Shown here piece by piece: positions 26,531-63,255 of a stretch of 64,000 nucleotides of DNA (its first letter is position 1; each line of letters begins with the position of its first letter). Both the position numbers and the translations under genes were made by a program. Source of the DNA: Octopus sinensis (lineage: Eukaryota); assembly GCF_006345805.1 (NCBI RefSeq), contig NC_043001.1, positions 47,182,001 through 47,246,000 of the forward strand, in the 5' to 3' direction. Below the pieces are notes generated by a model that saw only the letters and a list, made by a program, of their open reading frames with translations, did not search any database and had not been told where the DNA came from.

Positions 26531-26926
26531 TCGTGGTTCTCAATCTTTTTAATATCCGAACCAGATTAAAAACCTGGGCAGCACACAAAAAAAGTCGATT
26601 TAGTTAAATCTGCTCAGAGTTAACTCTCTTCGGCATTTCTCATTGATAATGTTTAAAGAGCTAGAAACGCTGTCTGGAAATCCAACAGTGAGTAACACTG
26701 GGCAGACAAGCTGTTTTTACACCTTTTACTACAAGATACAATTTTTTCTCTATAGTTATCGCCATGAACTTGCCTTCAGAAGTCGAAATATATCACAAAT
26801 ATATTTTAATAAACCTAATGTTAAAAAAAATATTATTATATTTATAGAGGGAAGGCCGTCGGGGGGCTGCCGGAAGGATGCTTGAGGGCTGTACGCGACT
26901 GAGAGAACCGCACTTGAGAACCGCTG
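26531..26926. mobile_element. hAT (Charlie-type) MITE
   Basis: Termini TCGTGGTTCTCAA / TTGAGAACCGCTG; perfect 8-bp TSD CTTTAAAC (26523-26530/26927-26934) fitting NTNTANAN. Confidence 0.85.
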
Positions 26927-27193
26927 CTTTAAACACTACGTGGGAGTTTTTGTCCGGTAATTGCATGGATAATATGAATTAACCAAAGTTCGTTTTCAAC
27001 TTATTGCATTACATATATGAGAAGATACAGTATTCTATAAGGTTGTCTCACATGAAATGTATTTTAAACGGGTTTCTTATGAGTCATCTATAAATGGATT
27101 TTTAATGAGTTTCTATGTATATGCTTGTGTTTACTCTTAACTCTTTTTCTTTCTAGATAATACTATTATTCAAAATTGCTACCCACAGCTCTT

Positions 27194-28203
27194 ATGACAA
27201 AGTTGACAACTCAACAACACCGAGTGATTTTCTTGTACGAATACAAGTTGGGTCACTCTGTCACCGAAGCTCTACGAAACATCAAGTGGGCTTTTGGTAA
27301 CGATTCTGTTGACGTTAGAACTGTTCAGAGATGGTTCGTTCAGAAAATGAAAGCCTTAAAAATGAACCAAGTGGGAGACCTAAATCAGTTATTCGGCATG
27401 ATGAATTGAATGCTTTGGTTAAACGAAATCCGAGAATAACGGTCCCAAAAATCGGATCAGAGCCCCAGACATCTCCCGCAACTGCTTCTCGACACTTGAA
27501 GAAAATTAGAAAAAGTCAAAGAGATGGGTAGGTTTGTTCCCCATCAACTTAATGAGATTCACAGAAACAGACGCCTTACAGCGTGTTCCATGCTTATTTC
27601 TCGGTTGGAAAGCGAACCATTTTTGTATCGACTCATTACGTGTGATAAGAAATGGATACTCTTTGATAACAATAGGGGGACAGGACAGTGGTTAGATGCA
27701 GGAGAGTTACCAAAACACCCAAAGCCACCATTGCATCCTAAAAAGTTGATGGTCACTGTATGGTGGTCAACAAAGGGGTTTATTCATTATTCATTTTTGC
27801 AACAAGGAAAAACTGTAACAGCAACATCATATTGCCAGGAAATTGATTGTATGCATGAAAAATTAAAAAAATAAGCAACGCAAATTAACGAACAGGGATG
27901 GCCCAATTTTGCTTCATGAAATTACACGGCCTCACACTTTTCAAGCTACGGTTGCAAGGCCTGAATTATGAAATTTTGGCACATCATCCTTATTCTCTTG
28001 ATATCTCTCCTACTGATTATCCCAAATTTAAACACTTCGGGCTTGCTATACGCAATAAAACAATCTTAAATAAAGCAGAGGTAATTGAAACATTCGCCCA
28101 GTTTATCAGTGTAAAAGATGGCAGATTCTTTGAAGATGGAATATATGTCTTAGAGGAACGTCGGATGAAAGTCATAAATGAACAAGGATCATATTTTGAT
28201 TAA
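27194..28203 (+). pseudogene. Mariner transposase pseudogene (frameshifted)
   Basis: Four ORF pieces: RVIFLYEYKLGH (HTH), FVPHQL (WVPHEL motif), TCDKKW, HPKKLMVTVWW and HHPYSLDISPTDY (YSPDL motif). Confidence 0.92.
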
Positions 28204-28263
28204 ATAAATAAATATTCTAAAACTTAAAATACAATTTAAATTTTCTACTCGTTCAAAGCGTGC

Positions 28264-28334
28264 GCATCGGTGGTTCAGTGGTAGAATGCTCGCCTGCCAC
28301 GCGGGCGGCCCGGGTTCGATTCCCGGCCGATGCA
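28264..28334 (+). tRNA. tRNA-Gly-GCC: tRNA-Gly(GCC), intact, inside mariner
   Basis: Identical 71-mer; T6 terminator downstream. Confidence 0.97.
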
Positions 28335-29473
28335 AATTAATTTTTTAAAGTAATTTTATTTTTTCCTTTATTCGTATTTGTTTCAAATGCGACGTTTCAT
28401 GTGAGACAACCTAATATTTCATATAAACCTGTTTGTAATGTCGTTTAGTAAATGATAGAAGTCAATGGTTGGATGACAAAATCAGAATAACGATGGAGAA
28501 AATCCCTCGCAGTATTTAGGCACCTTCCTTTATGTTATGAATTCAATCCCTACTGGTGGTATGTTTTTTTCTTTTTTGATAGGTGGTCCTTCTATATCAG
28601 ATATGAGCAAACTTTTTCGAGAAGCAGACTACATTAGACATATCAAGACATATCAAGCGGAGAGCACTACAAAATATATGCGAAGTAAATTTTGGTTAGG
28701 CGTACTTTTCAGAAACTCCTGTGGGCCGCAGTTTGCTCATTACTGTTCTATATGGTCGCTCGATTTGTTAGAAATAGCAGCCACATTCCCCAGTCCAGAT
28801 TAGATTGGCTGAAAATTGGAAGGTCATGGATGAAACGTCTTTAAAGTATGCCTGCTTGACGAGAGCTAATCCGGGGTTAAAGAATAGAAATAATAGCAAC
28901 AAGTAGTTTCTGATCGTGTGAAATAGTTAAAGCTGCAAAGAAATTTATATAAGATTTAAAAAAAAAAAGAGTTACCTCCCTTGTTTCGTATTAGCCGTTG
29001 TCTCGAGGCATTTCCGAAACAAGAGACTGGAATGGATTGACTTGAGGGTTAAATAACTGCAGCAACAACTATTACAAGAATCGAAGTATATTCAGAGATG
29101 CAGCAAATATAAGGAAAAATTATTTCATATATATATATGTATGTGTAAGCATGTTATGTTTATGCTTACCTAAGCGTGTACGGACTTTTACTGGCTGCTG
29201 AAACACATGCGTTTGCAAATAAAGTGAGCGTACATTTAAATTTCTGCGTATATCTATTGTATACGTGTGAGTATGTATGTTAATATATTGATATCTGGTT
29301 ACACGTTAAAACTGGAACTACAATGAACAGAAGCAGAACAACGTTTCAGAATGGAATAGGAACCTGTTAATAGACAGTCATTAACAATAATAATAATAAT
29401 AATAAAAAAAAAATCCCACAAATTTTTTCATATACTATATATATAGATAATTTTTTACCCCTCTGAAGCGTGC

Positions 29474-29544
29474 GCATCGGTGGTTCAGTGGTAGAATGCT
29501 CGCCTGCCACGCGGGCGGCCCGGGTTCGATTCCCGGCCGATGCA
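29474..29544 (+). tRNA. tRNA-Gly-GCC: tRNA-Gly(GCC), intact
   Basis: Identical 71-mer; T6 terminator. Confidence 0.97.
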
Positions 29545-29610
29545 ACTTACTTTTTTAAAGTAATTTTATATTTTCCTTTATTTGTATTTGTTTTTTTCAA
29601 GTAAGCGTGT

Positions 29611-29681
29611 GCATCGGTGGTTCAGTGGTAGAATGCTCGCCTGCCACGCGGGCGGCCCGGGTTCGATTCCCGGCCGATGCA
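29611..29681 (+). tRNA. tRNA-Gly-GCC: tRNA-Gly(GCC), intact; second copy of a 137-bp tandem pair
   Basis: Identical 71-mer; T6 terminator. Confidence 0.97.
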
Positions 29682-30077
29682 ACTTAATTTTTTAAAGTAA
29701 TTTTATTTTTTCCTTTATTTGTATTTGTTTGTTTCAAGTATAGGTACAATCCTTTATATTGATTTTTGTTGTTTTGCATCTTAGGTAGGAAGGACTGTGT
29801 CCATGACATTATTTTCGGGGCCTTTGAGATCTTACGGGAAAAAAGTTGGATGCGAAGAGCACGTACTGAAAATGGAATCGTAGTACGACTTTTTGCAAAT
29901 GTGTGGATTTTGATGAAACCACGACAAGGACTCGGTGTTTATATTAATCAGGGTGACAGAGCCTGTCCATCGTAAAAAACCCCCCAAAAAACAGAAGTCA
30001 AAGACGAGGAATGAAGACAAAAATACTTCCATTCTGCTTTCTACCAATTCCGTTAATCTATCTTTGTGAATTCTTTT

Positions 30078-30256
30078 ATCTTTTACTTGTTTCAGTCATT
30101 AAACTGTGGCCATGCTGGGGCACCGCCATGAAGAATTTTAGTCGAGCGAATCGACCCCAGTACTTACGTTTTTTAAGCCTGGTGCTTTGTCGAACTATTA
30201 AGTTTCGGGGACATAAACAAACTAATATCGGTTGTGAAGCGATGTTGAGAGGACAA

Positions 30257-34716: not shown

Positions 34717-35061
34717 GTCTATCTATATCTTTTATCTTTTACATGTTTCAGTCATTTCCCCGCGGCCATGCTGGGGCACCGCCTTATGCATATATGTGTC
34801 TGTGTTTGTGTTTGTCCCCCTCGATCGCTTGACAACCGACGTTGGTTTTTCTACATCCCCGTAACTTAGCGGTTCGGCAACGGTAGAATAAATATCAGGC
34901 TTAAAATATGAGTACTGGAGTTGATTTGTTCGACTAAACTCTTCAAGGCCGTGCCCCAGTATAGCCAGAGTCCAAAGACTGAAACAAATAAGATAAAAAA
35001 GTAAAGATACGTACCAAACCTTTTATATATATAGCAAATTATGTCAAGTGCATTCATCTGC

Positions 35062-38683: not shown

Positions 38684-39022
38684 ATCTTTTAAATTTTACA
38701 TGTTTCGGTCATTTCACCGCGGCCATGCTGGGGCACCGCCTTATACATATGTGTGTCTGTGTTTGTGTTTGACCCCCTCGATCGCTTGACAACCGACGTT
38801 GGTTTCTTTACATCCCCGTAACTTAGCGGTTCGGCAAAACGGTAGAATAAATATCAGGCTTAAAACATGAGTACTGGAGTTGATTTGCTCGACTAAACTC
38901 TTGAAGGCCGTGCCCTTGTATAGCCAGAGTCCAAAGACTGAAACAAATAAGATAAAAAAGTAAAGATACGTACCAAACCTTTTATATATATATAGCAAAT
39001 TATTTCAAGTTAACTCATGTGC

Positions 39023-41083: not shown

Positions 41084-41154
41084 GCATCGATGGTTCAGTG
41101 GTAGAATGCTCGTTTTCCACGCGGGCGGCCCGGGCTCGATTCCCGGTCGATGCA
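41084..41154 (+). tRNA. Variant tRNA-Gly with anticodon TCC (unit 2), function doubtful
   Basis: CTCGT-TT-TCC-AC-GCGGG; T54>C in the B box (GGCTCGA). Confidence 0.6.
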
Positions 41155-41763
41155 CTGCTTACTTATTTTTTCTTTTTTCTTACAACATGTGACGGTGGTT
41201 CAATGATAGAATATTCGCCTACAATACAAGCGTCACAGTTTCGTCTCCATCTGACTTTTCGTTGCAAAACGGAGACAACCATATACAAAAATTGTAACCT
41301 GTTGATTCGAAGTAGTTTTAGTACAACAGCTACCACAGTCGCAGACTTATGAGCCGCGAGCGGCTCGGGTTCGATTCCCGGTCGATGCAATAATCTTTTT
41401 TGAAAGAAAATTTACAATTTTTCGATCGTCATAAAACAGACCCATGAACATTTATTTTACTAATAACATCTACGCCTTACATGTGGTTTTCCGAGTCAGC
41501 ATCCGTTGTTCAATTGTAGTATGTTCGTCTGCCATAAATGGTTGCAAAACGGATAATATCGTACGTAAGAAAACAAGGGAACGAAATATAAGCTACATTA
41601 GTATCGGCAATAGAATAAGTACCCGGCACAAAAATAAAATACATACTCGGGCCGAGTAGTTGGATTAAAATTCCTCCAGGCAGTACACCAGCATGGCCAC
41701 AGTCATATGACAGAAACGCGTAAAAGAAAAGATAAACGATAATTTGAAATTTCTCGTTCGTCG

Positions 41764-43000: not shown

Positions 43001-43340
43001 ATCTTTTATCTTTTACATGTTTCAGTCATTTCACCGCGGCCATTCTGGGGCACCGCCTTATACATATGTGTGTCTGTGTTTGTGTTTGTCCCCCTCGATC
43101 GCTTGACAACCGACGTTGGTTTCTTTACATCCCCGTAACTTAGCAGTTCGGCAAAACGGTAGAATAAATATCAGGCTTAAAATATGAGTACTGGAGTTGA
43201 TTTGTTCGACTAAACTCTTCAAGGCCGTGCCCCAGTATAGCCAGAGTCCAAAGACTGAAACAAATAAGATAAAAAAGTAAAGATACGTACCAAACCTTTA
43301 TATATATATATAGCAAATTATGTCATGTCAAATCATGTGC

Positions 43341-46043: not shown

Positions 46044-46111
46044 CGGTCGGTGGTTCAGTGGTAGAATTCTCGCCTCCCACGTGAGACCCGGGTTCGATTC
46101 CGGTCGATGCA
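46044..46111 (+). pseudogene. Damaged tRNA-Gly(CCC) (unit 3)
   Basis: 5' end altered and small deletions; may partly be consensus error. Confidence 0.65.
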
Positions 46112-49423: not shown

Positions 49424-50410
49424 ATCTTTTATCTTTTACATGTTTCAGTCATTTCACCGCGGCCATGCTGGGGTACCGCCTTATACATATGTGTGTCTGA
49501 GTTTGTGTTTGTCCCCCACGACCGCTTGACAACCGACGTTGGTTTCTTTACATCCCCGCAACTTAGCGGTTCGGCAAAACGGTAGAATAAATATCAGGCT
49601 TAAGATATGAGTACTGGAGTTGATTCCCGGTCGATGCATTAATTTCTGGATTATTATTATTTTTTTAATTTGTTTATTTAATATAAATGGTTGGTGAGCT
49701 GGCAGAATCGTTTGCTCGTCGGGCAAAATGCCTAGCGGACTTTCGTCTGTCTTTACGTTCTCAGTTCAAATTCTGCCGAGGTCGACTTTACCTTTCGTTC
49801 TCGATAAATTAAGTACCAGTCAAATACTTGGGTCGATGTGAATTGACTTACCCACTCCGCCAAAATTACTCGCCTTGTGCCTAAATTTGAAACCAATGTA
49901 GGATGGTCGCAATGGCGATATATTAATATTTTCAAAAATACTTCACTTCCAGTTTCTGGCCTTCTGGATTTATTGATTGTTGTCATAGATAACAACGAAT
50001 AAATAGTAATTCAGTTTCGGTTACGTTGCTTGAAATCATTTCATTTCATAACGACAATATTTTGTGGAAAAAACATGACACTGTTATGTTATCTCCCCTT
50101 CTTGTGTTAATTAATGCTGAAATTTTGTCCATACGAATGAAAGTTATTAACACGGTTCTCCATTTTTAAGAACGTGAATCCTTTAACCTTCATTCTACCA
50201 TTGTTATACTTGTATCTCAGTATGTGATGGATCCATCTGAACGTCTTTGTATTTATTTTACGTTGTTGATATTTTACTTAGGGTATGGGCTAAGTCCAGG
50301 ATTAAGGATTCGAAAGAGGGCCAGTATATTCCATGATGGATCTATAAATATGAGTACTGGAGTTGATTTGTTCGACTAAAGTCTTCAAGGCCGTGCCCCA
50401 GTATAGCCAG
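46190..50410 (+). repeat. Higher-order ~2.13-kb tandem duplication of tRNA-less, deleted units
   Basis: 47169 to 49302 = 2133 bp; the same deletion junctions and private variants occur in both halves; outer bounds approximate. Confidence 0.85.
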
Positions 50411-50505
50411 AGTCCAAAGACTGAAACAAATAAGATAAAAAAGTAAAGATACGTACCAAACCTTTTATATATATATAGCAAATTATTTCAAGTTAACTCA
50501 TGTAC

Positions 50506-52513: not shown

Positions 52514-52589
52514 GCATCAATGGTTCAGTGGTAGATGCTCGCTCGCCTGCCACGCGTGCGGCCCGTGTTCGATTCCCCCGGTCGATGCA
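52514..52589 (+). pseudogene. Variant tRNA-Gly(GCC) pseudogene with indels
   Basis: Same substitutions as 45361 plus small indels. Confidence 0.7.
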
Positions 52590-53200
52590 CTGCTTATTAT
52601 ATTTCTTTTTTCTTACAAATTGTGACTGTCGTTCAATGATGATAGAATATTTGCCTACAATACAAGCGTCACAGATTCGTCTCCACCTGACTTTTTGTTG
52701 CAAAACGGAGACAACCATATACAAAAATTGTAACCTGTTGATGCGAAGTAGTTTCAGTATAACAGCTACCACAGTCGCAGACTTATGAGCCGCGAGCGGC
52801 TCGGGTTCGATTCCCGGTCGATGCAATAATCTTTTTTGAAAGAAAATTTACAATTTCTCGATAGTCATAAAACAGACCCATTGAACATTCATTTTACTAA
52901 TAACATCTACGACTTACATGTGGTTTTCCGAGTCAGCATCCGTTGTTCAATTGTAGTATGTTCGTCTGTCATAAATGGTTGCAAAACGGATAATATCGTA
53001 CGTAAGAAAACAAGGGAACGAAATATAAGCTACATTAGTATCGGCAATAGAATAAGTACTCGGCATAAAAATAAAATACATACTCGGGCCGAGTAGTTGG
53101 ATTAAAATTCCTCCTGGCAGTGCACCAGCATGGCCACAGTCATATGACAGAAACGCATAAAAGAAAACATAAAAGATAATTTGGAATCTCTCGTTCGTCG

Positions 53201-56502: not shown

Positions 56503-56859
56503 ATATCTATCTAACTATCTATATCTTTTATCTTTTGCATGTTTCAGTCATTTCACCGCGGCCATTCTGGAGCACCGCCTTATACATATGTGTGTCTGTG
56601 TTTGTGTTTGTCCCCCTCGATTGCTTGACAACCGACGTTGGTTTCTTTACATCCCCGTAACTTAGCGGTTCGGCAAAACGGTAGAATAAATATCAGGCTT
56701 AAAATATGAGTACTGGAGTTGATTTGTTCGACTAAACTCTTCAAGGCCGTGCCCCAGTATAGCCGGAGTCCAAAGACTGAAACAAATAAGATAAAAAAGT
56801 AAAGATACGTACCAAAACTTTTATATATATAGCAAATTATGACAAGTAAACTCATGTGC

Positions 56860-58889: not shown

Positions 58890-58960
58890 GCATCGATGGT
58901 TCAGTGGTAGAATGCTCGTCTGCCACGCGGGCGGCCCGGGTTCGATTCCCGGTCGATGCA
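58890..58960 (+). tRNA. Variant tRNA-Gly(GCC), all stems pairable
   Basis: A7:T66 compensated pair, T31.G39 wobble, intact A/B boxes. Confidence 0.75.
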
Positions 58961-60813: not shown

Positions 60814-61180
60814 ATCTTTTATCTTTTACATGTTTCAGTCATTTCACCGCGGCCATTCTGGGGCACCGCCTTATACATATGTGTGTCTGTGTTTTGTTTG
60901 ACCCCCTCGATCGCTTGACAACCGACGTTGGTTTCTTTACATCCCCGTAACTTAGCGGTTCGGCAAAACGGTAGAATAAATATCAGGCTTAAAACATGAG
61001 TACTGGAGTTGATTTGCTCGACTAAACTCTTCAAGGCCGTGCCCCAGTATAGCCAGAGTCCAAAGACTGAAACAAATAAGATAAAAAAGTAAAGATACGT
61101 ACCAAACCTTTTATATATATATAGCAAATTATATATATAGCAAAATATATATAGCAAATTATTCCAAGTTATCTCATGTG

Positions 61181-62560
61181 AATTCTTTAACCTTCAGTCT
61201 GTCATTGTAATACTTGTATCTCAGTATGTGATGTGTCCATCTGAACGCCTTTCAACTGATTTCACGTTGTCGATGTTTTCCTTGGGGTATGGATTTCATG
61301 CAGAATTAAGGATTTAAAAGAGGGCCAGTATATTCCACTATGGATCTATAAATGGTTTTGTATATCAGTCTTAGTTTTAGAAGTAATTTTTCCGAGGGAT
61401 TTCATGAACTTGGATAAAATATTTTGTTCTATTGTAAGTTGACCATTAACAAACTACTTCCTGGATAGAGTACCAACCTATAACGGACTATGTTTAATTC
61501 CTTTCTAGAAAGAAATGAATACATCACCGTATATCAAGGACTCACTCTTCATTTCTTTAGTGCTGCCACTGCTTAATATTAGCTTAAAAAAAAACTGAAA
61601 CGTGGTAAAGGAACTATTGTTACACGTAATTCTGCTCGTATCAGTGGGTCAGTAACGGAATACTGATTTAAAGCTTGATTTTTAAACGATTCATCAATTC
61701 CCATCTACCAGGAAGGATGCCTGAGTTCGATTCCCAATCGATGCACTTTGCGTGATTTTATTTTTTTTCTACCCACAACATGTGGCTTACTGTCTAATAC
61801 ACTATTAGCATCGGTTGTTCAGTGGTAGAATGTTTGCCAACCATACAGGCATTACGGTTTCGATTCAATTTGATCTTTTTTCTAAATAGACGATTGCAAA
61901 ACGAATCGTATAATATACAAAAATGTGTTGCCTACTGATTCAAAGTAATTTTAGTACAATAATTGTTATACAGATGGAAAATGGCGTCAGTGGCTCAGTG
62001 GTAGACTGTTTGCCTTTTTCGCGGGCAACCCTGGTTCGATTCCTTGTCGATGTAACTTTTTTGAAAGAAGTTTCCGATTCTTTTTGGATGGTTGCAACAT
62101 TGATCGATAAATATATATTTTACCAATGACTTCGACGAGTATTGATGGTTCAGTTATCATATGTTCGCCTGCTACGCAGGCCTCACAGTTTTGACCGAAT
62201 TTGATCATTGTTCTAAATAGATGATTGCAAAACAGATAATATCGAACGGAAAAAAAAAATAAAATAAAAAAATTAAAAATGCAACCTACCAATTCTGGAT
62301 ACTTTTAGTATATTTTATAGATAATTGGAAACAGTATATTTTATAGATAATTGGAAACAGCCTCACTGTTAGCATCGGTGGTTCAGTGGTAGAATTCTCG
62401 CCTCCCACACGAGTGGCCCGGGTTCGATTCCCGGTCATGCACTTTTTTGTTTTTTTTCTTGACTATTTCTTTTGTTTTTAATATAGATAATCACACAGGG
62501 GGTATATTAATATTTCAATGAATATATTATCTGCCATTCTGGATTTATTCATTGTTATCA
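61181..62560 (+). repeat. Diverged, SINE-free paralog of the array unit with a ladder of tRNA-Gly relics
   Basis: Spacer homologous but clearly more diverged; relics at about 61638, 61700-61745, 61808, 61984 and 62139. Confidence 0.85.
62372..62441 (+). pseudogene. tRNA-Gly(CCC), likely pseudogene
   Basis: 1-nt deletion in the acceptor 3' strand (CGGTCATGCA) and C31.A39 mismatch. Confidence 0.7.
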
Positions 62561-63155: not shown

Positions 63156-63255
63156 NNNNNNNNNNNNNNNNNNNNNNNNNNNNNNNNNNNNNNNNNNNNN
63201 NNNNNNNNNNNNNNNNNNNNNNNNNNNNNNNNNNNNNNNNNNNNNNNNNNNNNNN
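63156..63255. other. Assembly gap (100 N)
   Basis: Run of N. Confidence 1.

What the first reader, a model, noticed from the sequence alone, without database searches (positions are those of the whole stretch)
27036..28416. An intact tRNA-Gly gene carried inside a full-length mariner transposon
Seen: both TIRs (2/25 mismatches) and TA duplications enclose the transposase pseudogene and a perfect tRNA-Gly(GCC) with terminator. The tRNA lies between the stop codon (28203) and the right TIR. The extra ~130 bp is bounded by a TTCAAA direct repeat (28252-28257/28382-28387); removing it leaves ~1.25 kb, normal mariner size. Known: dead mariners with good TIRs can be mobilised in trans. Inference: a DNA transposon that has captured a Pol III gene and could disperse functional tRNA genes.
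Basis: partly seen in the sequence, partly recalled or inferred. Interest (0 to 1): 0.8.

Follow-up and report, generated by a model that had tools for sequence, protein, structure and literature searches.

The report
Neighbouring tRNA copied into dead mariner
A decayed mariner transposon carries, just inside its right end, a 130-bp copy of a tRNA-Gly gene unit that lies 1.1 kb away; it looks like a one-off product of local DNA repair or replication copying, is unique in the genome, and is an ordinary single-copy "Pack-TIR" rather than a transposon that spreads tRNA genes.

Summary
Window 27038-28414 is a DD34D mariner pseudogene with TA duplications and good TIRs. A canonical tRNA-Gly(GCC) with a T6 terminator sits between the transposase stop codon and the right TIR, inside a 130-bp insert flanked by two TTCAAA copies.

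New results:
- All 27 other family copies with an alignable 3' end have this site uninterrupted, with one TTCAAA.
- The insert is 97-98% identical over 128 nt, 57 nt of non-tRNA flank included, to two tandem 137-bp tRNA units 1.08 kb downstream (29466-29740). This unit occurs nowhere else in the 2.7-Gb assembly.
- Both junctions, and any tRNA B-box next to this TIR, are unique genome-wide.
- The left junction is a scrambled mosaic of mariner-like and donor-like sequence. Short microhomology marks both breakpoints.

Best reading: an in-situ, microhomology-guided templated insertion (gap filling or template switching) into a resident mariner. This is a single-copy Pack-TIR, as described in animals by Tan et al. 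2021.

One family copy keeps an open DD34D reading frame, so trans-mobilisation is conceivable but there is no evidence for it. Interest is low. It is a new member of a known kind.

The parts
27036..27037 (.). Left TA target-site duplication of the mariner
   Evidence: Sequence. Most aligned family copies have TA next to TTAGGTTG.
27038..28414 (+). Mariner element, 1377 bp (1247 bp without the insert). It is 5.9% diverged from the family consensus of 1265 bp.
   Evidence: Genome search found at least 40 scored copies at 82-88% identity. Alignment and consensus. On the consensus protein, Pfam gives Transposase_1 and HTH_48. The best solved-structure matches are SETMAR and Mos1 transposase.
27038..27064 (+). 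Left TIR (TAAGGTTGTCTCACATGAAATG...). Position 2 is T>A relative to the family consensus.
27194..28203 (+). Transposase pseudogene. Relative to the 342-codon DD34D consensus it has indels of -10, +1, -3, +1 and -8 nt, plus in-frame stops.
28239..28251 (+). Scrambled patch at the left junction. About 7 of 13 positions differ from the mariner consensus, with 1 extra nt. The distal part matches the donor's own upstream flank in register.
   Evidence: The match to the donor upstream flank is 11/17, empirical p about 0.001 against all 17-mers of the window.
28252..28257 (+). Left TTCAAA. This is native mariner sequence and is present once in other copies.
28258..28387 (+). The 130 extra bp: an 8-nt leader, the tRNA, a 49-nt trailer and the second TTCAAA. 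Homology to the donor units runs over 28256-28383.
28264..28334 (+). tRNA-Gly(GCC), canonical sequence. The A box TGGTTCAGTGG and B box GGTTCGATTCC are present.
   Evidence: ARAGORN, Rfam 66.7 bits, identity to other copies.
28341..28346 (+). T6 run, a Pol III terminator-like signal 6 nt after the tRNA. A second T6 lies at about 28361-28366.
   Evidence: Sequence.
28382..28387 (+). Right TTCAAA copy. It is ambiguous between donor TTTCAA and mariner TTCAAA.
28388..28414 (+). The terminal 27 nt of the right TIR (TGCGACGTTTCATGTGAGACAACCTAA), colinear with the family 3' end.
28415..28416 (.). Right TA target-site duplication
29466..29740 (+). Donor locus: two tandem 137-bp units, each holding a tRNA-Gly(GCC) (29474-29544 and 29611-29681), in the same orientation as the insert and 1.08 kb downstream. 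Only unit 1 has the TATATATATAG upstream element.
   Evidence: TRF gives period 137, 2.0 copies, 97% matches. blastn gives 96.9% and 97.7% identity to the insert over 128 nt. These are the only other full-length matches in G000.

Best explanation
A mariner of an old, largely decayed DD34D family inserted at a TA next to a tRNA-Gly gene cluster. Later, at this same site, a break or stalled replication fork just inside the right TIR was repaired by DNA synthesis. That synthesis switched template to the tRNA-Gly unit 1.08 kb downstream, copied about 130 nt (8-nt leader, tRNA, terminator, 49-nt trailer), and switched back to the mariner. The switches were guided by short microhomologies: AA on the left, and GTT or TT(T)CAA on the right. 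This left a duplicated TTCAAA and a scrambled left junction.

The product is a single-copy 'Pack-TIR', meaning a TIR element with a host-derived filler. It has stayed where it was made.

Shown here: the insertion, its local and unique donor, its uniqueness in the genome, and the anatomy of the junctions. Inferred: the repair or replication mechanism, and the order of events relative to the tandem duplication. Unknown: whether this tRNA copy is transcribed.
For: 1. All 27 other family copies with an alignable 3' end carry the uninterrupted site TTTTTCAAATGCGACATTTCATG.
2. The insert matches two tandem units at 29466-29740 over 128 nt at 97-98% identity, including 57 nt outside the tRNA. Every other tRNA-Gly(GCC) in the 2.7-Gb assembly matches only over the tRNA and a few adjacent bases.
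3. Donor and copy are 1.08 kb apart and in the same orientation. This is the cis bias reported for gap-filling Pack-TIRs, where the majority of the nearby cases lie under 5 kb from the parent (PMC8277862).
4. Microhomology: a random TE-donor junction reaches 5 nt or more in 0.7% of simulations and 3 nt or more in 6%.
5. The 13 nt left of the junction differ from the consensus at about 7 positions, against 5.9% for the rest of the copy. The 17 nt upstream of the shared AA match the donor's upstream flank at 11/17 in register, p about 0.001. That is a complex junction typical of repair synthesis, not of a clean integration.
6. Both junctions are unique in G000 at up to 3 mismatches. The pattern 'B box, 55-85 nt, TIR core' is also unique.
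7. The event is old and real. The insert has 2 private substitutions in 57 flank nt, and the three unit copies are about equidistant from each other.
Against: - No reads, second haplotype or sister species could be examined, so neither the junctions nor the order of events is independently confirmed (searches found nothing).
- The insert covers almost exactly one tandem unit, with boundaries within about 2-8 nt of the unit's own. A random template switch would do that only about 4% of the time (my estimate). This hints at a discrete unit-length intermediate or a shared breakpoint mechanism.
- The right-hand microhomology is 5-6 nt only if a 4-nt TTTG slippage indel is allowed. Without a gap it is 3 nt.
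- A break caused by excision (transposase-dependent) cannot be told apart from one independent of transposition.
- The genome search scores only the best candidates, so copy counts are lower bounds.
Confidence: 0.8

Rival explanations
1. One reading: the mariner captured the tRNA gene and has been, or still can be, moved by a transposase supplied in trans, so that it disperses functional tRNA genes. This includes the variant in which capture happened beside the array and the element then hopped about 1 kb to its present site.
For: - Both TIRs are intact (23/25 complementary) and the insert lies just inside the roughly 30-nt terminal repeat, with TA duplications present.
- One family member (G000:C5:116742620-116743642) keeps an open 341-codon frame with the DD34D residues, though it is only about 90% identical to the consensus.
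- Multicopy Pack-TIRs do exist in animals, at 1.4% of cases (PMC8277862).
Against: - There is no second copy. The junctions, the unit and the B-box/TIR pattern are all unique in 2.7 Gb.
- The donor is 1.08 kb away, as expected for an in-situ event.
- The family is old (median K2P distance 0.068 to consensus) and, among its higher-identity scored copies, all but one have stop codons.
- A local hop is an extra event with no evidence behind it.
Confidence: 0.06
2. The 130 bp entered as a discrete piece of DNA. It could be a unit-length extrachromosomal circle or fragment released from the tandem array, or a retroposed Pol III read-through transcript. In this reading it integrated at a staggered break, and TTCAAA is a true 6-bp target duplication.
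For: - The insert is almost exactly one repeat unit (128-131 of 137 nt), with boundaries within a few nt of the unit's own.
- The insert is flanked by a perfect 6-bp direct repeat.
- It starts 8 nt upstream of the mature tRNA, a plausible Pol III start site.
Against: - The left junction is a mosaic whose distal part matches the donor's upstream flank. That sequence lies outside the repeated unit and upstream of any transcript.
- The insert runs through two T6 terminators and has no A-tail, which argues against retroposition.
- The unit is not dispersed anywhere else in the genome.
- The GT(A) of the tandem junction, expected in a circle-derived monomer, is absent.
Confidence: 0.09
3. Assembly artefact: a chimeric read or mis-join placed a copy of the nearby repeat inside the mariner.
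For: - The region is repeat-rich, with 20 tRNA calls and many microsatellites in the window.
- No read-level data were available.
Against: - The insert has private substitutions relative to both donor units (positions 80 and 117 of the unit).
- The mariner resumes exactly where it left off.
- The junction shows an evolved mosaic rather than an abrupt join.
- The nearest assembly gap is 35 kb away, at 63156-63255.
Confidence: 0.03

Closest known systems
Single-copy Pack-TIRs of animals made by transposition-independent gap filling (Tan et al. 2021, Nat Commun, PMC8277862). Of the 370 cases, 115 were in TcMariner elements.
   Same: A TIR element keeps both ends and its TSD and has a host-derived filler inside. 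The parental copy lies in cis within 5 kb. There is microhomology at the breakpoints (their median is 2 bp). The case is single-copy, and the element is old and decayed.
   Different: - The filler here is a complete Pol III gene (tRNA plus terminator), not a fragment of a Pol II gene or intergenic DNA. A full-text search found no paper containing both 'Pack-TIR' and 'tRNA'.
- No mariner sequence was lost; a 2-7 bp stretch was duplicated instead.
- The breakpoint is very close to the end (27-33 nt from it), whereas theirs are biased toward the interior.
Filler DNA and abortive or interrupted gap repair (SDSA with template switching) after excision of P, Ac/Ds or mariner elements. This is established knowledge, and is also cited in PMC8277862.
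   Same: Templated copying of nearby sequence into a transposon, short microhomologies, and complex mosaic junctions.
   Different: Here it cannot be shown that a transposase-made break started the event. The usual outcome is an internal deletion, and none occurred here.
Pack-MULEs and transduplication, for example Turmoil-1 in C. elegans (PMC2572040)
   Same: Host sequence is carried between the ends of a DNA transposon.
   Different: Those elements are multicopy and have transposed with their cargo. This one is a single copy at the site where it was made.
Dada DNA transposons, which target tRNA and snRNA genes (PMC3706591)
   Same: A DNA transposon physically associated with a tRNA gene.
   Different: Dada inserts into small-RNA genes at a specific site. 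Here the tRNA lies inside the element, the target is a plain TA, and the transposase is a DD34D mariner.
tRNA-derived SINEs
   Same: A roughly 130-nt insertion containing a tRNA, flanked by a short direct repeat.
   Different: The tRNA is an unmodified canonical gene with genomic leader and trailer. There is no LINE-like tail or A-tail, and the unit is not dispersed.

Membership tests
mariner (Tc1/mariner superfamily, DD34D) | Transposase with an N-terminal paired HTH domain and a DDE/D catalytic domain with D,D(34)D spacing | tested here: met
   On the family consensus ORF (342 aa): Pfam HTH_48 at 2e-19 and Transposase_1 at 6.5e-29. D154, D246 and D281 give 34 residues between the last two. 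PDB matches to SETMAR at 1e-92 and Mos1 at 7e-79. The window copy itself is a pseudogene.
mariner (Tc1/mariner superfamily, DD34D) | Short TIRs of about 30 bp, TA target-site duplication, length of about 1.3 kb | tested here: met
   TIR 23/25 complementary. TA on both sides here and in most aligned copies. Consensus 1265 bp.
Pack-TIR (TIR transposon with captured host sequence) | Both TIRs and the TSD retained; internal segment absent from the family consensus; parental copy of that segment identifiable elsewhere in the genome | tested here: met
   (27 of 27 informative copies lack it). (parental units at 29466-29740, 97-98% identity over 128 nt).
Single-copy, gap-filling subtype of Pack-TIR | Single copy in the genome | tested here: met
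   Junction patterns are unique at up to 3 mismatches. The unit search and the B-box/TIR pattern give the same answer.
Single-copy, gap-filling subtype of Pack-TIR | Parental copy in cis and nearby; microhomology at the breakpoints | tested here: met
   1.08 kb away, same strand. AA on the left; GTT (ungapped) or TTCAA/TTTCAA (with a 4-nt slippage) on the right. Random expectation is P(5 nt or more) = 0.007 and P(3 nt or more) = 0.06.
Single-copy, gap-filling subtype of Pack-TIR | An orthologous TE without the filler in outgroup species, showing capture after insertion | not testable with these tools
   No related eukaryotic genomes are on hand. Exact-protein look-ups in other assemblies found nothing.
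Functional nuclear tRNA gene | Cloverleaf with canonical sequence, internal A and B boxes, downstream oligo-T terminator | tested here: met
   T6 at 28341-28346.
Functional nuclear tRNA gene | Pol III occupancy or transcription of this particular copy | not testable with these tools
   No expression data. This copy lacks the TATATATATAG element that lies 20-40 nt upstream of donor unit 1 and of the five array copies. Upstream regions of identical genes elsewhere vary, so this is inconclusive.
tRNA-derived SINE or other mobile tRNA unit | Many dispersed copies sharing the non-tRNA part, each with its own target duplication | tested here: not met
   The 128-nt unit occurs only at the insert and at its two neighbouring donor units.

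The most novel reading that the evidence does not exclude
The tRNA-bearing mariner is a mobilisable Pol III gene cassette. With intact TIRs and at least one family member that still has an open DD34D frame, it could be, or in other individuals or populations already has been, moved in trans. In that case cut-and-paste transposons would contribute to the spread of tRNA genes in this tRNA-rich genome.
Probability: 0.03. Interest if true: 0.6.

Novelty: new member of a known kind. Interest (0 to 1): 0.22.

Why it matters
Taken on its own, this is one more single-copy Pack-TIR. Tan et al. report about 2 per 10,000 TIR elements in animals, and this genome gave about 60,000 first-look mariner-like candidates, so a handful are expected.

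It has modest value as a natural marker. Because the target is a transposon with a known consensus, the breakpoints of a non-tandem local duplication of a tRNA gene can be read to the nucleotide. They show that tRNA units in such clusters are copied by microhomology-guided template switching, and the tandem 137-bp pair next door may have arisen in the same way. It also shows that a complete Pol III gene can end up between working-looking TIRs, although here it went no further.

Tried and rejected
- Independent assemblies of the locus: exact-product look-ups for two ORF fragments of the pseudogene found nothing.
- Organism identity: not established. From memory, the assembly size (2.72 Gb in 13,516 contigs) and a SINE-like repeat suggest an octopus. 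I leave this untested.
It was replaced by a DNA search with the whole insert.
- Upstream promoter comparison: identical tRNA-Gly(GCC) genes elsewhere have heterogeneous AT-rich upstream regions, so the missing TATATATATAG element says little about activity.
- Dating: the insert has 2 private changes in 57 nt, against 5.9% divergence for the mariner. There are too few sites to order the events. Zero changes in the 71-nt tRNA has P of about 0.08 under neutrality, so it is not evidence for selection.
- Rejected: two truncated mariners flanking a tRNA. The two parts abut at the same consensus position with a 6-bp overlap.
- Rejected: a SINE.
- Rejected: a clean TSD-forming integration.

Full report
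OBSERVATION

The window is eukaryotic DNA (39% GC, rich in microsatellites) from contig C5 of a 2.72-Gb assembly.

- TIRs: a 25-nt inverted repeat with 2 mismatches at 27036-27060 / 28392-28416.
- Element: 27038-28414, flanked by TA on each side.
- Reading frame: transposase-like, ending with TAA at 28201-28203.
- tRNA: tRNA-Gly(GCC) at 28264-28334. It is called by ARAGORN and scores 66.7 bits on Rfam RF00005, where the gathering score is 29. It is followed by a T6 run at 28341-28346.
- Direct repeat: TTCAAA at 28252-28257 and 28382-28387.

THE ELEMENT

A search of the window's own genome returned 40 scored matches (780 first-look candidates) at 82-88% identity. I aligned 29 of them with the window copy.

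- The family ends are TA|TTAGGTTGTCTCACATGAAATG ... CATTTCATGTGAGACAACCTAA|TA.
- The majority consensus is 1265 bp and restores a 342-codon ORF.
- That ORF carries Pfam HTH_48 and Transposase_1.
- Its best solved-structure matches are the SETMAR transposase domain and Mos1.
- It has D154, D246 and D281, which is DD34D spacing.

The family is therefore a classical mariner. Copies sit at a median K2P distance of 0.068 from the consensus, and the window copy at 0.062. The window copy is a pseudogene, with indels of -10, +1, -3, +1 and -8 nt plus stop codons.

Among the family's higher-identity scored copies, one (G000:C5:116742620-116743642) has no stop codon. It keeps the three catalytic aspartates and is about 90% identical to the consensus.

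THE INSERT AND ITS SOURCE

Relative to the consensus, the window copy has one large insertion, at consensus position 1242 of 1265. All 27 other copies whose 3' end can be aligned read straight through this site as ...TTTTTCAAATGCGACATTTCATGTGAGACAACCTAA, with a single TTCAAA.

The window as a whole is a tRNA-Gly cluster, with 20 tRNA calls of which 19 are Gly. Tandem Repeats Finder reports a 137-bp repeat in two copies at 29466-29740, each unit holding a tRNA-Gly(GCC).

The mariner insert (28256-28383) matches these two units over 128 nt at 96.9% and 97.7% identity. The match includes the 8-nt leader AAGCGTGC and a 49-nt AT-rich trailer. The other canonical tRNA-Gly(GCC) genes of the window, and all others found in the genome, match only over the tRNA and a few adjacent bases. 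The donor is therefore the tRNA locus 1.08 kb downstream, on the same strand.

NO DISPERSAL

Three genome-wide tests each found only the window locus in 2.72 Gb.

- A 31-nt pattern for the left junction and a 33-nt pattern for the right junction, each allowing up to 3 mismatches.
- A gapped pattern asking for any tRNA B box 55-85 nt from the family's TIR core.
- A search with the 132-nt insert, which returned only the insert and its two donor units as full-length matches.

If a daughter copy had been made after capture, it would differ from this one by a few percent at most. The two independent junction searches should then have found it.

JUNCTION ANATOMY AND MECHANISM

Left junction. The mariner's TTCAAA runs into the donor's (A)AGCGTGC, so 1-2 nt (AA) could come from either side.

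Right junction. The donor's ...GTATTTGTTT meets the mariner's (GTT)CAAATGCG. That is 3 nt of microhomology without a gap. Alternatively it is TTCAA or TTTCAA (5-6 nt), if a 4-nt TTTG slippage difference from the donors (GTTTGTTTCAAG and GTTTTTTTCAAG) is allowed. In 200,000 simulated random junctions between this mariner and the donor region, 3 nt or more occurred in 6% and 5 nt or more in 0.7%.

Between 2 and 7 nt of mariner sequence are duplicated, and none is lost.

The 13 nt immediately left of TTCAAA (28239-28251) differ from the family consensus at about 7 positions and carry one extra base. This is the densest cluster of differences in the whole element. When the window and the donor are aligned in register on AAGCGTGC, the 17 nt upstream of the shared AA match the donor's own upstream flank at 11/17, with p about 0.001 against all 17-mers of the window. 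The distal 10 nt match the donor at 9/10. The proximal 9 nt look like the mariner, at 7/9.

I read this as a mosaic junction made by repeated template switching or by patchy heteroduplex repair. This is inference. It argues against a clean cut-and-paste or retroposition event in which TTCAAA would be a true target duplication.

The insert also runs through two T6 runs and has no A-tail, which argues against a Pol III transcript as the intermediate.

One observation is not explained by a random template switch: the insert corresponds almost exactly to one unit of the tandem repeat. This leaves some room for a unit-length DNA intermediate, or for a single complex event that produced both the tandem copy and the ectopic copy. 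The three copies are about equidistant in the 57 flank positions, with private changes of 2 in the insert, 2 in unit 1 and 1 in unit 2.

COMPARISON WITH WHAT IS KNOWN

Tan et al. 2021 (PMC8277862) catalogued 370 'Pack-TIRs' in 100 animal genomes. Their findings line up with this case as follows.

- 115 of the 370 were in TcMariner elements.
- 98.6% were single-copy.
- 57% lay within 15 kb of the parental copy, and the majority of those within 5 kb.
- 68% had microhomology at a breakpoint, with a median of 2 bp.
- The authors attribute them to transposition-independent gap filling.
- The rate is about 2 per 10,000 TIR elements.

The present case meets every defining feature that I could test. 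I could not test for an orthologous empty mariner in an outgroup.

It differs in three details. The cargo is a complete tRNA gene with its terminator; a full-text search found no paper containing both 'Pack-TIR' and 'tRNA'. The breakpoint is 27-33 nt from the element's end. No transposon sequence was lost.

It is not a Pack-MULE-like multicopy transduplicate such as Turmoil-1 (PMC2572040). It is not a small-RNA-gene-targeting transposon such as Dada (PMC3706591). It is not a SINE.

FUNCTION OF THE tRNA COPY

The 71-nt sequence is identical to the canonical gene, which was found at 27 distinct loci among those fetched, and it has A and B boxes and a terminator. Zero changes in 71 nt, given about 3.5% private divergence in its flanks, has P of about 0.08. 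Conservation by selection or gene conversion is therefore not demonstrated.

This copy lacks the TATATATATAG element found 20-40 nt upstream of donor unit 1 and of the array copies. Upstream regions of identical genes elsewhere are heterogeneous, however. Whether it is transcribed cannot be decided with these tools.

VERDICT

The structure is real, but it is a one-off, in-situ templated copy of the neighbouring tRNA unit into a resident dead mariner. It is not a vehicle that has dispersed tRNA genes.

Trans-mobilisation remains formally possible, because the TIRs are intact and one family copy keeps an open frame. There is no evidence that it has happened.

This is a new member of a known kind, and interest is low.

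Noticed in passing
window 34580-61560: A tandem array of at least 5 units of about 4.3 kb at 92-97% identity, some stretched to 6.4-7.2 kb by internal duplications or insertions. Each unit carries three tRNA-Gly genes in the same order: canonical GCC, a GCC variant (GCATCGATGG...) and CCC. In all, 19 of the window's 20 tRNA calls are Gly.
   Followed up: partly
window 41084-41155: In one array unit the GCC-variant gene reads anticodon TCC (anticodon loop CGTTTTCCACG, against CGTCTGCCACG in its paralogue at 58890). This is an anticodon shift inside a GCC-type body, and it still scores 60.3 bits on Rfam.
   Followed up: no
window 61984-62054, 52514-52590, 46047-46111: Decayed tRNA-Gly-like copies. 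One is called tRNA-Lys(TTT) by ARAGORN but falls below the Rfam threshold. One is a 77-nt copy with small insertions. One is a remnant seen only by blastn.
   Followed up: no
window 30056-30187 and at least 20 other places (for example 34896-34998, 38855-38957, 43067-43274, 50353-50440, 56694-56796, 60984-61086): A SINE-like repeat of about 105-130 nt (...ACTGTGGCCATGCTGGGGCACCGCC...) occurs many times in both orientations, often 60-70 nt upstream of the canonical tRNA-Gly(GCC) genes of the array. I did not identify it. From memory it resembles an abundant cephalopod SINE.
   Followed up: no
G000:C5:116742620-116743642 (L004 1661-2683): This is the only family copy among those scored that has an uninterrupted transposase frame: 341 codons, DD34D kept, about 90% identical to the consensus. 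Its left TIR has a 2-nt deletion.
   Followed up: partly
whole genome G000: The protein search gave about 60,000 first-look candidates for mariner-like transposase and many distinct families at 43-70% identity. Three matches had no stop codon: the family copy above, plus two at 45-46% identity to the consensus (C2:120075971-120076978 and C9:50112111-50113091).
   Followed up: no
G000:C7:40.00-40.23 Mb: A second large cluster of identical tRNA-Gly(GCC) genes lies on another chromosome-sized contig, with at least 15 hits within 230 kb.
   Followed up: no
window 26860-26930: A GC-rich island (GGAAGGCCGTCGGGGGGCTGCCGGAAGGATGCTTGAGGGCTGTACGCGACTGAGAGAACCGCACTTGAGAACCGCTGC) sits about 100 nt upstream of the mariner in otherwise AT-rich DNA. 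It may be another repeat.
   Followed up: no
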